This document shows positions 48,770-57,000 of a stretch of DNA of 64,000 bases, piece by piece. The stretch comes from Marsupella aquatica (Eukaryota > Plantae > Marchantiophyta). The DNA lies in assembly GCA_973895155.1 (NCBI GenBank), contig OZ316898.1, positions 17,660,752 to 17,724,751 of the forward strand. Direction: 5' to 3'. Numbering within the stretch: position 1 is the first letter of the stretch; each line of letters starts with the position of its first letter. The notes below the pieces were generated by a model. It was not told the origin of the DNA. It ran no database searches and worked only from the letters and a program-made list of their open reading frames with translations. The translations under genes and the position numbers were made by a program.

Positions 48770-50447
48770 TCATACTGCAAGCCTTCTACGCCCCTTGGCC
48801 TTCCTTCGCGCAAGAACCCTTCGACCCCCAACCGTTTCCTTCCTGATCTCCAAGTCATCCAGAAGGTGAGAATCAGTCGCAAATCGGGAATCTGACACCT
48901 AAGCAATTGATGGGAAGCCAAACCCAAAGTGACTCTTTAATCACCTAATGGCGTAAGGCAAATCGCTGATCTCATATACGACTACTCTAAATTGAACTAA
49001 ACAGCAAACTTCTTCTACTTAATGACTGCAACCTGTCCAGCGTTATTCAAAAGAATGAATGGACGACTCTCACAAGCGACAAACTGCATGAGATGAGAGC
49101 TCACCTAACGAGGAAGCCGTGCGTCCGTTTCCGTTTGAGATTGCTTGGCTGGTAAGTCCTCTTGGTTGCCGTAACCATTGGGCTGCAGATGTCCAATGTG
49201 TACATTCTAGTCAACTAAGGGGAGCAGATTGGAACTACATACCTTTTGACATCAAAACTACCCGATTATACCTTTCAGACAAATAAAAATGAGATAGTCA
49301 CAGAAATAAAAACTCCACCGCCTCTGAATTGATATGCATTGCAAATAACTGATCCAAAAGCTGAATTGCTCTGGACTCAAGCCAAGAGTACGATATGACC
49401 CACAAAGGTTCCCAAATGAGGCAGCACTTTGCCACTCTGCGTACAAGACCACTAAAAAGGGGACTAGAGGGGACTTGTTTCGAAGATTGGTGTGAAATCC
49501 TATCTACTCTCAAACACGTGAGGCATTTGTTGCCAAACTTCATTTGACCGATAAAGATGAGCTTACTCAAGAAATGCAATTTTAGGGTGTCGCGACGAAA
49601 GCAAGAATTACCTGTCCGAGGTTCCTACGCCAGGGCAAAATGCTGCAAACCCAGACAGACAGCCCAAAAAGAAATCCATCAATCAATCGGCTGGACAAAT
49701 GCAAAGTCTAACCCTGATCTGTTGCAAAAGCCTAGACTCTCATCTACCAGCTACAGTACCACTGAACGAGCACAACCACTGAACGAGCACAGAGCTGGTT
49801 CAGCTCGTCTCGGCAATTCACATTCCACGGTAACCTCACAAAAGGGCACATCACCAGATCAAAGCATAGCCGGCGTTGCATTGCATAGCAGCAGACCTAG
49901 TAGCTCACAAATCAAGGGTATGTAAACAGAATAGCACAAATAACGCACCGTCTTCAATAACTGCGCGAGGATCAGCGGGCCACCCGGCGGGATTGAAAAG
50001 TGCCAAAACTTCAGCTTCCCGAGCTAATCTCAACTCGTGCAATCCTCTGCCTCCTTCCACAACCACGTTCTGCTGTGCTCTCAGCATTGGCGATGACAGC
50101 TTGGCATCGGCATGAGAGCAGGCAGCAAGAGAAGCAGGGAAAAGATTTAGAGAACCGAATGTGGCAAGTTTCTGATCACCACATTGCCGCCCATGGAATG
50201 CTTGTAACAAATTAGGGTCCACAAATTCGGCAGTCTCGTCGGTACCAGAAGATCTAGTGGAGGAGGACGAAGTGGCCTTGAGGTCCACGAGGAGAGAAGC
50301 TGAAGACGAGGCCGAGGAGCTGGAGCTGGAGGAGGAGGCGATAGACGAATAGAGAGACCGCAGAGAAGGGAGCAGGCGATGGCAGCCGGGTGTGGTGGAG
50401 AGTCCGCTCTTGAGGGTCAGCACCGCAGTCTTCAACGCGGACGCCAT
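48770..50447 (-). CDS. RPL34: Mitochondrial-type ribosomal protein L34 (bL34m), 226 aa with long N-terminal extension
   Basis: Exons 50447-49949, 49642-49612, 49182-49105 and 48842-48770 (GT-AG, phases 1/2/2). The C-terminus [44 protein letters not shown] is a canonical bacterial-type L34. Only exon 1 appears in the ORF track. Confidence 0.93.
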
Positions 50448-50640
50448 CGCCGCAGTGTCACCTCTCTCTCACACTGATTCTCACCTTCTCTTCGCTTCAC
50501 CTTCGTCAATCCCTCGTTCGTGTTTTCCTGAGTATTGCATTCGCTACTCAGCGAATAGCGAACGAACGAGCGAACGTTTTCTTTCAGCACTTCATCGTTT
50601 CCAAAGTCTCTTCATATACAGCCGTCTCTTTACAATTGCG

Positions 50641-52784: not shown

Positions 52785-54033
52785 TAGTGTAGGCTTATTT
52801 GTCTCTCTGGTCTTTCTGAGATTTTGCCCATGATTTCTCACCTTTATTGGGTCTCTTGTTGTTAGGATCTTGCCTCCTTGTTTGGCACTATTTGTTCTTT
52901 GACAATGTGATACATATAATTATTTCTATTTTGGAAGGTCTATGAAACTTAACCCTGGAAAAATTTGTCGGTTCAGACTATACAACAAATGCAAAAAACA
53001 TGAAAGTACACCTGAGCACCCACTACACCAACAAGAGATCACGGATGGAAAAATACTGAAGATCCATAATATATGAGAGTATATGTGAAGAATGAGGGAG
53101 ATAATGTTCTTCCTAAAACCTATACTTGCCAAGGGGAACTAAAATATGTGGGCCTAAGTGAAGTGGAACTTATTCTAATTTAGCGAGCCCTATGCCCGTG
53201 CATTGCACAGCGCAATGAGGGACGGCCCATAGGGAGTTGCGCCGGGGGGGGGGGCGAGCGCATTGGGACCGAGGGGAGGGCGAGGCATCGCGAGCATTGA
53301 TGCCGTTTATGTATATCGCGAGGGGGGCCCATAATAAAGACCCAGGCATGGGAGGCCTCGCCAGAGAGGGCAAGTGCTAATCAAACAAATACAAAAATCC
53401 TCTAAAATATCAAACGTTCAGTTTCATTCCCACCGATTCTGGATTTCATAATGGGACAAGGACGGAAAAAGGTGTTATCAGGTATTATAGTTGTAGATTG
53501 AGGGTCAATTAACCCTAGTAAGGCCAAATCAACTTGAGTTGGAAACTTGAGTCAATTCCTAACAAACCCCCTCCTCTCTTTTTTCCTTCATAGAGTCAAG
53601 GGAGGTCCCCACTCATAACCCCCTCACCACCTTGCTAGAGGATTCCAATACAATACACGCTCATCACCGTACTTGAGGATCATAGCCCATAACCCCCTTG
53701 AGACCATGGATTACCCCTCCAAAATATTTGATTCTGGATATGGGTGACTCTCCGATAAATGAATATAACTCAAACTGAGTTTCCCCTTGATATAAGAACA
53801 CTACAAAGACGACACGTTCTTAAGTTCTTAAGACGAGACGTTCTTGAGATGGAAGAGAGTTTGGAAAAGGAAGAACACGTTCGCTATTCACCAAGTTGCG
53901 AATGCCACAAATTGCGAATGCAATAGCGAAAGCCCATGAGATGGAAGAGACTTGTGGGCGAAAAGACAAAGAGCTCATGAGCTCGTGAGCTCGAGAAGGA
54001 ACGCACAAGGCGAAGGATTGAGTGTTTAGAGCA

Positions 54034-57000
54034 ATGGCTGCCATGGCGTCAACTGCGAGCGCTGCCCTCGCGCTCAAGGGACTCTCGACTCCCTGCTGCC
54101 ACCGCTTCCCGTCCTCTCTGCGTCCCCTCTGCTTCTCCATTGCTTCCTGTTCCTCCGTTTCTCTTCTGAATTGCTACTTCCCGCATTTTGATCGAGGTTC
54201 CAGGTACTCGACGTCTCCTTCTCCTCGGACCCACATTGGTACCTCCGAATTTGTCGACGCACATTTTCTGAAATCGTTTCGTGGCCGGAGGCAATTTCAC
54301 AATCAACGGGGAGTGGGAACAGTTGCTGCTTCCGCTTCTGCCGCTGCTGCTGAGACTGTCATCTCAGAGTCCTCGTCTTCCACTGGTAATGTAACAGCTC
54401 CGGGTGAGGGGACTAATGTCGAAAGATTGGGTTCCTCCGTTCCTCCGTTTCTTGTTTGATTTGTGATGGTCGTCTTCACGTAGCACGAGAATTGCTAGGT
54501 TTGTTCAGGACTAGCAAATCTCATAAGCCTCAGGGTTTGAGTAGCTCCTTTGTTTTTTACGTATCTCTTCTCCTTCTCTCTTTTTGAGTACTAGTATAAT
54601 TCTAGGCTGTTCAAGTTTACTGATTTAATCGATTATGTTGTGCTTGCTTCCTCGTGTTCTAGCGAGTCAGGCCAGTGACTCTGTGGAGAGGCCCTCATGG
54701 CGTGCAAGCATTGATTTCAAGTGGATACGAGAGAACAAGGATGCAATTGCTGCCAATATTTTGCATCGCAAGTCTAGTGGTGATGTCGAGGCTGTGGTGC
54801 AACTGTACGAGCAGTCCGTTCAGCTTAGCCAGGCAAACTCCTCCTTTCGTCCTGTCTAGACATTCCAGTTCACTGAATGATCACATTCGCCATGTCATGC
54901 TGCAGCTCAGCAATATAATTTTCTAAAGCAAAACCTTCGCTGGGGCAATTGAATGCAGGAAGTGGATAAGCTGCGGGCTGAGAGAAATTCTGTGGCGAAT
55001 GCTATGAAAGGAAAGTTGGAAAAGGCGAGGAGGGAGGAGCTCATAAGCCAAGGCAAGATAATAGAGCCGCTTTCTGAAATCAAAATTTGAATGAGAATAT
55101 TTTTTCATTGGCTAACGGCAATGGGATGGTTAACGGCAGGTTTTGGTCATTGCTCCCATAAGAAGAGCTCCTTTCTCCAGCTATATTTGCGTTAATGGTG
55201 AGAGCGAGAGTCTTTGGAGGTCTAATCAAAGCGTTCCGGGTGTGATATTGAACACCTGCTGTGGTTGCTGAAAAAATTCCTTTGATTCGAGAGCAGTTGC
55301 TCGTTCAGGAGAAGAATATTGAAATGAATATGGCGGGTTCTAGCAATGATATGCAGACAGACTCCGGGTTGCCTTCTAGTACGAAGCCTCCCTCGGCAAT
55401 AATAACTAAAGATTCCCTTGCATCCACAGACAGCAGACAGTTTTAAATTATGCTGTTGTCACAGAACTTGAACCAGACCACTTTGTGACTGCAGGAAAGA
55501 ACCTGAAAGATCAACTGGTAGGTCTAGAACAAAAGCTTGATCTACTTTCTGACAAGCTTCAACGAGAAGGACAACGGATTCCAAATATAACCCATCCGAG
55601 CGTACCTTTGGGTTCTGAAGACTTGGCGGCTGTTCGAAAGCTGGTATAAAGAGAGTCAGAATTGTCGTAGTTTCTTGTTTACAATCTTTCGGGATCAATC
55701 ACGGTGGTTCCTGACAGATATCTATGTTTTAAAGTCAGAAGCAAAAGTAATAATGCCTGAATAACTTTGAAACTGTTTTGGAGCTTCTGCCAGGTTGGCA
55801 GCCAACGTCAATTTACATTTCCTGTCAAGGATCATGTTGAGCTCGGTCTTGCTCTTGACCTATTCGATTTTGAGGCAGCGGCGGAGGTAACCGTCGTTTA
55901 TCCTCTCTTGTTACAATTTATATCCTTTCCTGTCTTCGCCAATGCTTGTTGCTGACCTTGAGTGCACAACCACATTTTTATGACATGCTGTCTGGTTACA
56001 GGTGAGCGGAAACAAGTTTTACTACCTGAAAAATGAAGCTGTTCTTTTGGAGATGGCACTGATCAACTGGACACTGGCAGAGCTTCTGAAGAGAGGCTTT
56101 GTACTGCTCAGCACTCCCGACCTTGTACGCTCAACTGTAGTGGAGAAGTGTGGTTTCCAGCCTAGAGGACAAAACACACAGGTTTGAACCTCACGTTTTA
56201 TCATTTCCTCTGACACTCGACTTACTACAATTTTCCTGACATTGTGAGGTTCTTCACTCACGACCCTGGTCACATGCAATTTTTGTAACTATTGTGCGCA
56301 GGTTTATTCCGTTGAAGATACAGATCTCTGCCTGGCAGGTACTTCTGAGATTCTCGTCGGGGGTCTGTATATGGATTCCATGCTTCCAGAAGCATCCCTA
56401 CCCTTACGACTGGTTGCTCATTCGCATTGCTTTCGAACTGAAGCTGGTGCCGCTGGTTCATCAACAAGGTTACGATGCTGACCTACATTCTACATATGTC
56501 CTCACCTTGGCTCAATATGTTATCTCTTTTCACAAATTATACCTAGCTTAGATTGCGAGAGTCACTTCTTTGTGCAAACTGACTGGCTTCCTGGCTAGTA
56601 TCCTTTGCATTACCTTCGAATATTTCTTTCCTGTTTATTGGCCAATAGACTTGGTCCCTCTAGAAGTTGTTGATCGTTCTTGAATTTGATGAACGGGTTA
56701 CAGGACATGATGTGCAGAGGTCTTTATCGGGTTCACCAGTTCAGCAAGGTGGAGATGTTTGGCATAAGTCGACCTGAAGAAAGTGAAGCAATGCATGAAG
56801 AATTGATTACCATTGAGGAGGATTTGTATACTTCTCTCGGCCTACACTTCAAGTGGGTTACCCTGTCTTGCAGAGCGGTGCTGTTGAGCCGTCATTGAAA
56901 TTCATATCTCCTTTCGGTTTCAATGTGCCTCATCTGGAGCTGAATTTAGGAGTCTACTGCAGGACTCTGGACATGGCCTCGGAGGATCTTGGAGCTCCAG

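What the first reader, a model, noticed from the sequence alone, without database searches (positions are those of the whole stretch)
50160..54310. Head-to-head L34 and SerRS genes share a homologous N-terminal targeting presequence
Seen: two unrelated organellar translation proteins, divergently transcribed ~3.6 kb apart, start with alignable ~90-aa regions. L34 reads [41 protein letters not shown]...SLL...[22 protein letters not shown]. SerRS reads [42 protein letters not shown]...[23 protein letters not shown]. Similarity extends to the DNA (GAATTTGTGGAC vs GAATTTGTCGAC; TGCCATCGC vs TGCCACCGC) and uses colinear non-low-complexity motifs (CHR, EFVD, GR.Q). Known: organelle-targeted proteins can gain presequences by duplicating those of existing genes, and the angiosperm organellar SerRS is dual-targeted. 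Inference: a local inverted duplication of the 5' end of one gene gave the other its targeting signal, and both copies are still constrained. The EFVD..F.GR block may be a processing or import determinant, and L34 may be dual-targeted. The donor direction cannot be read from this window.
Basis: partly seen in the sequence, partly recalled or inferred. Interest (0 to 1): 0.85.

Follow-up and report, generated by a model that had tools for sequence, protein, structure and literature searches.

The report
Inverted duplicate start shared by two genes
Two unrelated neighbouring plant genes, for a mitochondrial ribosomal protein (L34) and an organellar seryl-tRNA synthetase, point away from each other and start with diverged inverted copies of one roughly 450-base piece that carries upstream DNA, the start codon and about 90 codons of a likely organelle-targeting peptide; this is a clear but not unprecedented case of a targeting signal spreading by duplication.

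Summary
The first ~90 residues of the L34 and SerRS precursors align far better than chance: BLOSUM62 score 99 against 29.5±5.4 for shuffles, and z about 8 when local composition is kept. Both flanking blocks are significant on their own. The similarity also continues about 170-190 nt upstream of both start codons, in the same order. So this is a real inverted duplication of DNA (about 50175-50613 and 53852-54312), not two serine-rich peptides converging.

Both first exons fit complete gene models. L34 has four GT-AG exons and 226 codons, and exon 1 and a 31-nt micro-exon are conserved in another species. The SerRS exon 1 donor is conserved in a third species and its phase fits exon 2.

The L34 copy exists in the other species, and the paralogues are about as diverged as those orthologues, so the duplication is old. 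Rough dN/dS values are 0.3-0.4. The donor gene is unresolved. No RNA run was available, and targeting is inferred from composition only.

The genome is a liverwort according to earlier scan notes, not an angiosperm.

Unexplained extra: both modules are the fastest-diverging parts of the locus between two close relatives.

This is a known kind of event (presequence duplication) in an unusual local, inverted layout that includes upstream DNA. First-stage notes list similar pairs elsewhere in this genome. Those are unchecked.

The parts
50175..50447 (-). L34 arm, coding part: start codon (50447) and the first ~91 codons of L34 exon 1 ([24 protein letters not shown]...[18 protein letters not shown]). 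This is homologous to the start of SerRS.
50448..50613 (-). L34 arm, non-coding part: upstream DNA (5'UTR or proximal promoter) holding the two inverted-repeat blocks 50537-50564 and 50598-50613.
49949..50174 (-). Rest of L34 exon 1, not shared with SerRS. It holds a lineage-conserved middle region ([27 protein letters not shown]) and ends at the donor G|GTGCGT.
   Evidence: dN/dS is 0.28 against the other species. Similarity to SerRS ends here.
49612..49642 (-). L34 exon 2, a 31-nt micro-exon with AG/GT borders. It restores the reading frame between exon 1 and exon 3.
   Evidence: A conserved island in the alignment with locus L001; frame check.
49105..49182 (-). L34 exon 3: first half of the L34 domain (..[21 protein letters not shown]).
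   Evidence: Pfam PF00468, E 2.2e-10
48770..48842 (-). L34 exon 4: second half of the L34 domain ([23 protein letters not shown]) and the stop codon.
   Evidence: Pfam PF00468, E 1.5e-6
53852..54033 (+). SerRS arm, non-coding part: upstream DNA holding the partner blocks 53852-53867 and 53878-53905.
54034..54312 (+). SerRS arm, coding part: ATG at 54034, with a second ATG at 54043 that aligns with the L34 start. It covers the first ~93 codons ([24 protein letters not shown]...[22 protein letters not shown]).
54313..54385 (+). End of SerRS exon 1, not shared with L34 ([25 protein letters not shown]). The donor is ACTG|GTAATG, in phase 1.
   Evidence: The donor is conserved in locus L003 from another species.
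54663..57536 (+). SerRS exons 2 to last. They begin at the acceptor ..ttctag|CG, carry the Seryl_tRNA_N and class II core domains, and end at the stop codon at 57534-57536. Internal exon borders were not all mapped.
50614..53851 (.). Spacer between the arms. It holds a 48-bp x 2.9 tandem repeat (50641-50781) and three high-copy segments that look like transposon insertions (about 50750-51180, 52361-52788 with 45-nt terminal inverted repeats, and 52950-53550). The rest is single-copy DNA (about 51180-52350).
   Evidence: (depth 10-300 times the single-copy level; loose contig ends at 50968, 52361, 52788, 53184)

Best explanation
A segment of about 450 bp was duplicated in inverted orientation within a few kilobases. 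It comprised the proximal upstream DNA (or 5'UTR), the start codon and the first ~90 codons of one nuclear gene for an organellar translation protein. The copy became the first exon, and probably the transcription and translation start, of the neighbouring gene.

The result is a head-to-head pair. One gene is a mitochondrial-type ribosomal protein L34 (minus strand, 4 exons, 226 codons). The other is a bacterial-type organellar seryl-tRNA synthetase (plus strand). Their precursors begin with the same serine-rich, basic, nearly acid-free N-terminal extension.

Shown here:
- the homology of the two modules
- its limits
- its extension into non-coding DNA
- the open, phase-compatible gene models
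- the conservation of the L34 copy in a second species

Inferred:
- that the shared peptide is an organelle-import signal used by both proteins
- that the event replaced an older presequence of one partner, since neither gene is a recent organelle-to-nucleus transfer
- that transposon insertions later widened the spacer to 3.2 kb

The event is old, about as old as the split from the species of locus L001. Which gene was the donor is unresolved.
For: - Protein alignment is far beyond global and local shuffles, and both blocks are independently significant.
- Each exon is the other's best non-self hit in the six-frame window.
- Colinear inverted matches lie upstream of both ATGs and were not reached by any shuffle or any random window piece.
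- Homology has sharp limits on both sides.
- The L34 model is a single 681-nt ORF (226 codons plus the stop codon) over four GT-AG exons. Exon 1 (59% identity, dN/dS 0.28-0.38) and the 31-nt micro-exon are conserved in locus L001.
- The SerRS exon 1 donor is conserved in L003, and its phase fits exon 2. The in-frame ATG inside intron 1 is not kept in frame in L003.
- Domain identity comes from Pfam.
- The first 60 residues of each precursor have 5 K+R against 1 D+E, and 17-25 S+T.
- Both arms are present, each with its own variants, in contigs of a second organism, and the arms are at single-copy depth. This is not an assembly artefact.
- The known precedent is presequences copied from other genes' presequences (PMC2631504, citing Kadowaki et al. 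1996).
Against: - No transcript evidence: none of the four runs that hold the locus is on record as RNA, and all were laid as contigs, which cannot show transcripts. Splicing of either exon 1 to the mature exons rests on phase, GT-AG borders and conservation.
- No targeting predictor or localisation data were available.
- With composition-corrected BLAST statistics the protein match alone is weak (22 bits, E 0.24).
- No SerRS exon 1 from any other species could be fetched. A profile of the module found only the L34 orthologue among 1.84 billion representatives. The age and direction of the event therefore rest on about 30-70 synonymous sites that are near saturation.
Confidence: 0.8

Rival explanations
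1. Convergence or composition. Two independent serine-rich, basic targeting peptides look alike because all such peptides share composition and a few short motifs. There was no duplication.
For: SEG masking plus composition-based statistics cut the BLAST score to 22 bits, E 0.24. The middle third of both peptides is low-complexity serine-rich sequence.
Against: Shuffles within 5-residue blocks, which keep local composition and position, never exceed 72 against the observed 99. The two non-repetitive blocks are each significant. The similarity continues into non-coding DNA upstream of both ATGs, in the same order and in inverted orientation. Convergence of peptides cannot produce that.
Confidence: 0.04
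2. Both modules come from a third source. Neither gene copied the other. Each received the presequence-plus-leader module from another gene, or from a transposon that carries captured gene fragments. Their adjacency reflects two insertions or one composite insertion.
For: The spacer is full of high-copy, transposon-like segments. First-stage notes on this genome list captured presequence fragments and other gene pairs that share 5' modules (unchecked). Clustered differences with adjacent double changes in both arms between close relatives could reflect conversion from unseen copies.
Against: No third copy exists in the 64-kb window. Read depth over both arms is single-copy at 90% identity or more. 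The arm ends are not flanked by recognisable terminal repeats, and similarity fades rather than stopping at an element border. A profile of the module found no further protein in 1.84 billion representatives.
Confidence: 0.1
3. One of the copies is a dead relic. The duplicated exon upstream of SerRS (or of L34) is not used, and the real mRNA starts elsewhere, for example inside what is modelled as intron 1.
For: There is no RNA evidence. An in-frame ATG lies at 54635 inside SerRS intron 1. Both modules are the fastest-diverging parts of the locus between close relatives.
Against: Both exons keep long open frames that join in phase to the next exon. Indels between relatives are in frame, for example +GGA at 50258. 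About half of the coding differences are synonymous. The L34 exon is under purifying selection between species. The SerRS donor site is conserved in L003, while the intronic ATG is out of frame there. Without exon 1, SerRS would have no N-terminal extension.
Confidence: 0.06

Closest known systems
Presequence acquisition by duplication of an existing targeting signal: rice rps11-1 from atp2, Arabidopsis sdh3 from hsp70, carrot rps10 from hsp22 (Kadowaki et al. 1996, as summarised in PMC2631504)
   Same: Two proteins with unrelated mature parts carry homologous N-terminal targeting extensions because the coding DNA of one was copied to the other. One partner is a mitochondrial ribosomal protein.
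   Different: Those cases follow a recent transfer of a mitochondrial gene to the nucleus, and donor and recipient are dispersed in the genome. Here neither gene is a recent transfer, so an older presequence must have been replaced. The two copies are adjacent and inverted, and upstream non-coding DNA was copied too. The organism is a liverwort according to scan notes.
Common use of one presequence by two proteins through alternative splicing: rice and maize rps14 / sdhB (cited in PMC2631504)
   Same: A mitochondrial ribosomal protein and an unrelated mitochondrial protein use the same targeting sequence at one locus.
   Different: There a single presequence exon is shared by splicing of one transcript. 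Here there are two diverged physical copies, on opposite strands, each with its own upstream DNA.
Exon shuffling of targeting peptides: plant cytochrome c1 (Long et al. 1996) and transit-peptide exons, as reviewed in PMC7456531
   Same: In SerRS the targeting part lies on its own first exon, followed by an intron just before the mature protein starts.
   Different: In L34 the shared part is not a separate exon. It is continuous with 75 further conserved codons. The duplication breakpoints do not coincide with intron borders.
Head-to-head gene pairs with a bidirectional promoter
   Same: Two functionally related genes (organellar translation) are transcribed divergently from a common intergenic region.
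   Different: Here each gene has its own copy of the proximal upstream DNA, and the copies are 3.2 kb apart. A shared regulatory element, rather than duplicated ones, is not shown.

Membership tests
Presequence shared through duplication of an existing targeting signal | The mature parts of the two proteins are unrelated | tested here: met
   Ribosomal_L34 (PF00468) on one gene against Seryl_tRNA_N (PF02403) and tRNA-synt_2b (PF00587) on the other. No similarity beyond the N-terminal module.
Presequence shared through duplication of an existing targeting signal | Significant similarity is confined to the N-terminal extensions | tested here: met
   Score 99 against 29.5 +/- 5.4. Local-composition shuffles reach 72 at most. 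The limits are 50175 and 54312.
Presequence shared through duplication of an existing targeting signal | Common descent is shown at the DNA level, not only by peptide likeness | tested here: met
   Coding DNA scores 42 against 19.7 +/- 2.8. Colinear inverted matches of 28 nt (86%) and 16 nt (94%) lie upstream of both ATGs and exceed all controls.
Presequence shared through duplication of an existing targeting signal | The exon carrying the extension is expressed and spliced to the mature-protein exons | tested here: inconclusive
   Phases, GT-AG borders and cross-species conservation fit. No RNA run holds the locus.
Presequence shared through duplication of an existing targeting signal | The extension directs import into mitochondria and/or plastids and is cleaved | not testable with these tools
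   Only composition is available: 5 K+R, 1 D+E and 17-25 S+T in the first 60 residues, plus a low-confidence predicted N-terminal helix at residues 3-16.
Ribosomal protein bL34 (Pfam PF00468), mitochondrial form | A complete L34 domain is present | tested here: met
   Profile positions 1-21 are on exon 3 (E 2.2e-10) and 21-44 on exon 4 (E 1.5e-6). They are joined in frame.
Ribosomal protein bL34 (Pfam PF00468), mitochondrial form | It belongs to the mitochondrial rather than the plastid ribosome | not tested
   My reading of the [15 protein letters not shown] motif as mitochondrial or bacterial-like rests on memory of family sequences. No tree was built.
Bacterial-type (organellar) seryl-tRNA synthetase | An N-terminal coiled-coil tRNA-binding arm and a class II catalytic core are present | tested here: met
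   PF02403 matches exons at 54663-54859 and 55485-55649. PF00587 matches three later exons.
Bacterial-type (organellar) seryl-tRNA synthetase | It is the organellar rather than the cytosolic paralogue, and is dual-targeted | not tested
   This is inferred from the 117-codon N-terminal extension only. No phylogeny or localisation was done.

The most novel reading that the evidence does not exclude
Inverted duplication of a '5' module' (proximal promoter, leader and targeting-peptide start) between neighbouring genes is a recurrent process in this liverwort lineage. It would spread both co-regulation and co-targeting among organellar genes. This locus would be one of several such head-to-head pairs: first-stage notes list SufC-SecY, PPR-CBS/RPL18 and PPO/hydrolase in the same genome. 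The modules may also be mutational or recombinational hot spots, because both arms diverge more than 10 times faster than the surrounding single-copy DNA between close relatives.
Probability: 0.2. Interest if true: 0.7.

Novelty: new variant of a known kind. Interest (0 to 1): 0.45.

Why it matters
How nuclear genes gain or exchange organelle-targeting signals is usually reconstructed from dispersed copies whose origin is blurred. Here donor and recipient still sit side by side, and the duplication breakpoints are readable. The copy includes upstream DNA, so a single event could have given the second gene both a targeting signal and the regulatory context of an organellar-translation gene. The locus also shows presequence replacement in long-established nuclear genes, not only after a fresh organelle-to-nucleus transfer. 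If the other pairs noted in this genome hold up, the process would be general enough to study experimentally in liverworts, for example in Marchantia.

Tried and rejected
1. Deaminase relic idea. phmmer of L34 exon 1 against the PDB gave colinear but weak hits to plant guanosine deaminase (E 0.48-1.3). I rejected it as noise for four reasons:
   - The orthologue and SerRS exon 1 give unrelated hits at equal E-values (PsaD, Rieske protein).
   - The two-species profile loses the hit.
   - Pfam finds nothing at E up to 10.
   - The AlphaFold2 model is unusable (mean pLDDT 45, pTM 0.18), so no fold search was run.

2. ESM Atlas search for L34 exon 1: no usable hit.

3. Polarising the event:
   - SerRS exon 1 found no relative in the word-indexed protein search.
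   - SerRS exon 2 found one species (P0002 / L003), but that 934-nt contig starts at the last 12 bases of exon 1.
   - The HMM profile of the module found only the L34 orthologue P0001.

4. Conversion between the arms as the cause of the clustered differences to organism B. Some changes move towards the other arm (L34 CTG ACC -> CTC GCC, against SerRS CTC GCG). Others move away (50602/3; F73Y). The idea is not supported.

5. Transcript evidence: no RNA run was listed, and read laying returned contigs only.

6. Rfam on 44000-60000: nothing at gathering score.

7. Literature search for the run accessions, to name the species: nothing.

8. The joined (spliced) L34 model was used only inside a script to check the frame. 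All searches were done exon by exon.

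
Full report
**1. What is in the sequence**

The minus-strand gene ends in two short exons that together make a complete Ribosomal_L34 domain (Pfam PF00468, E 2.2e-10 and 1.5e-6). The plus-strand gene carries Seryl_tRNA_N and the class II synthetase core over several exons, down to a stop codon at 57534-57536. 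These are two unrelated proteins of organellar translation, transcribed away from each other.

**2. Is the likeness more than chance?**

Yes.
- Residues 1-91 of L34 against 4-93 of SerRS score 99 (BLOSUM62, local). 2000 shuffles gave 29.5 +/- 5.4, maximum 57.
- Targeting peptides are compositionally odd, so I used harder controls. Reversed sequences score 25. Shuffles confined to blocks of 5 to 20 residues, which keep local composition in place, give means of 33-36 and never exceed 72.
- The non-repetitive N block ([21 protein letters not shown]) scores 66 against 21 +/- 4.6. The C block (T.EFVD..L..F.GR.Q) scores 51 against 17 +/- 3.6. Each is beyond all 5000 shuffles.
- In a six-frame search of the whole window, each exon's best non-self hit is the other (41-44 bits). 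The next hits are serine runs of 26 bits or less.
- Caveat: with SEG masking and composition-based statistics the BLAST score falls to 22 bits, E 0.24.

**3. The deciding evidence is in non-coding DNA**

The inverted similarity continues upstream of both start codons, in the same order.
- 50537-50564 pairs with 53878-53905 (28 nt, 86%).
- 50598-50613 pairs with 53852-53867 (16 nt, 94%).
- The 28-nt match scores 20. The maximum was 19 in 2000 shuffles and 17 in 1935 random pieces of the window.

Peptide convergence cannot explain this. Beyond 50613 / 53852 upstream and beyond 50175 / 54312 downstream, nothing exceeds chance. The duplicated unit is therefore about 440-460 bp: 50175-50613 and 53852-54312.

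**4. Gene models**

- The open frame runs on to 49949. This further part is conserved in the only relative that the protein search found, P0001, on a 3.8-kb genomic Logan contig, L001.
- The DNA alignment with L001 shows conservation up to a donor G|GTGCGT. It also shows a sharply conserved 31-nt island with AG and GT borders (49612-49642), followed by the two L34-domain exons.
- With that micro-exon the four exons give one frame of 681 nt (226 codons plus the stop codon), with GT-AG at every intron.

*SerRS.*
- Exon 1 (54034-54385) ends at ACTG|GTAATG in phase 1, and exon 2 starts at 54663 behind ..ttctag. This reads through correctly into [18 protein letters not shown].
- A contig of a third species (L003, 88% identical in exon 2) begins 12 bases before this donor and keeps it.
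- An in-frame ATG inside the window's intron 1 is out of frame in L003.

There is no RNA evidence. The four public runs that hold the locus were laid as contigs that cover introns and spacer, so they behave as genomic DNA, and none is on record as RNA. I did not send the joined models to any search tool. All searches were done exon by exon.

**5. Age, constraint and direction**

- The L34 orthologue in L001 has the module: [32 protein letters not shown] ... GTSEFPKSNFPQAFH.
- Nei-Gojobori estimates over the alignable codons:
  - window L34 against window SerRS: dN 0.50, dS 1.9 (N block: 0.33 / 1.15)
  - window L34 against L001 L34: 0.42 / 0.86
  - window SerRS against L001 L34: 0.43 / 1.07 (N block: 0.19 / 0.72)
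- With 30-70 synonymous sites near saturation, these three distances cannot be ordered. The duplication is roughly as old as the split of the two species, or older.
- dN/dS is about 0.26-0.38 for the module and 0.28 for the L34-specific middle region. This indicates purifying selection, but weaker than on typical mature proteins.
- The VD and GR residues of the 'EFVD..F.GR' block are not kept in L001, which weakens the idea of a strict processing motif.
- Direction stays open. I could not obtain SerRS exon 1 from any other species. The structure is compatible with either donor.

**6. What the shared peptide probably does**

The first 60 residues of each precursor have 5 K+R, 1 D+E and 17-25 S+T. 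This is the composition expected of plant organelle-targeting peptides, by established knowledge. The unreliable AlphaFold2 model puts a helix at residues 3-16. No predictor or experiment was available, so targeting is inferred. Dual targeting of L34 is pure speculation.

**7. The spacer**

Contig depth in four runs shows three high-copy segments, at about 50750-51180, 52361-52788 and 52950-53550. Many contigs have loose ends at their borders. The second segment has 45-nt terminal inverted repeats, and the first is a 76-nt-arm hairpin. A 48-bp x 2.9 tandem repeat (50641-50781) abuts the L34 arm. The arms were probably closer together before these insertions.

**8. An unexplained extra**

Against organism B (runs X3 and X4), contigs over the two first exons carry 13 differences in 640 nt in X3. 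Single-copy contigs of introns and spacer carry 1 in 2516 (Fisher p = 1e-8). For X4 the figures are 7/536 against 0/1782 (p = 3e-5).
- The non-coding upstream arms also differ at several places.
- Five of the differences are adjacent double changes.
- About half of the coding changes are synonymous.
- X3 and X4 differ from each other.
- The changes do not consistently move one arm towards the other.

I cannot tell whether this reflects a mutation hot spot at 5' ends, old haplotypes, or conversion from copies elsewhere.

**9. Leads that failed**

A weak, colinear PDB hit of L34 exon 1 to plant guanosine deaminase (E 0.48) is noise. The orthologue and SerRS exon 1 give unrelated hits at the same level. 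The profile loses the hit. Pfam finds nothing. The structure model is unusable. The ESM Atlas gave nothing.

**10. Comparison with what is known**

Copying of presequences from other genes is established for plant mitochondrial proteins: rice rps11-1 from atp2, Arabidopsis sdh3 from hsp70, carrot rps10 from hsp22. One presequence can also be shared by alternative splicing, as in rps14/sdhB (PMC2631504). Exon shuffling of targeting peptides is a textbook idea (PMC7456531).

This locus is the same kind of event, with three differences:
- Donor and recipient are adjacent and inverted.
- Upstream non-coding DNA was copied too.
- Neither gene is a recent transfer from an organelle, so a presequence was replaced rather than first acquired.

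Earlier follow-up notes of this scan call the genome a liverwort. I did not verify that. First-stage notes also list other gene pairs in this genome that share 5' modules, including a head-to-head SufC-SecY pair. These are unchecked leads, not support.

**11. Verdict**

It is not shown for expression, targeting function, the motif's role or the donor direction. This is a neat, probably new variant of a known mechanism, of moderate interest.

Noticed in passing
window 50152-50640 and 53914-54361, against 49426-49774, 50987-52621 and 53358-53889: Between the window and a closely related organism (runs X3, X4), both 5' modules differ by 2-3%. Flanking single-copy introns and spacer are almost identical (13/640 against 1/2516, p = 1e-8). 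Several differences are adjacent double substitutions. Unexplained.
   Followed up: partly
window 48861-48877 and 50473-50489: There is a perfect 17-nt inverted match between the presumed L34 5' leader and the last intron of the same gene. In the pre-mRNA they could pair (blastn E 0.014 within the window). It may be chance.
   Followed up: no
window 50641-50781: A 48-bp tandem repeat (2.9 copies, 96% alike) sits directly upstream of the L34 arm. Each unit contains AAACCCT on the L34 strand. This resembles the telo-box known from plant ribosomal-protein promoters (PMC3212954) but is not identical to AAACCCTA.
   Followed up: no
window 49949-50124 (L34 exon 1, residues about 108-166): A conserved, lineage-restricted middle region lies between the presequence and the L34 domain ([27 protein letters not shown]). 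dN/dS is 0.28 against the other species. It has no Pfam, PDB or Atlas relative. It may be a mitoribosomal N-terminal extension of unknown role.
   Followed up: partly
window 45027-46616 (+): An intronless 529-codon ORF carries an RCC1-like domain (PF25390 E 2e-61; five RCC1 repeats) and has acidic and lysine-rich tails. It lies 2.2 kb beyond the 3' end of L34.
   Followed up: no
window 50812-50966; 52361-52786; 52950-53550: Three high-copy, MITE-like or repeat segments lie in the spacer: a 76-nt-arm hairpin, an element of about 426 bp with 45-nt terminal inverted repeats, and a G-rich repeat. Depth is 10-300 times the single-copy level in four runs.
   Followed up: partly
window 61011-63900 (+): Ty1/copia-type retrotransposon ORFs (gag with a zinc knuckle, then integrase) lie downstream of SerRS. 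The reading frames are broken into several pieces.
   Followed up: no
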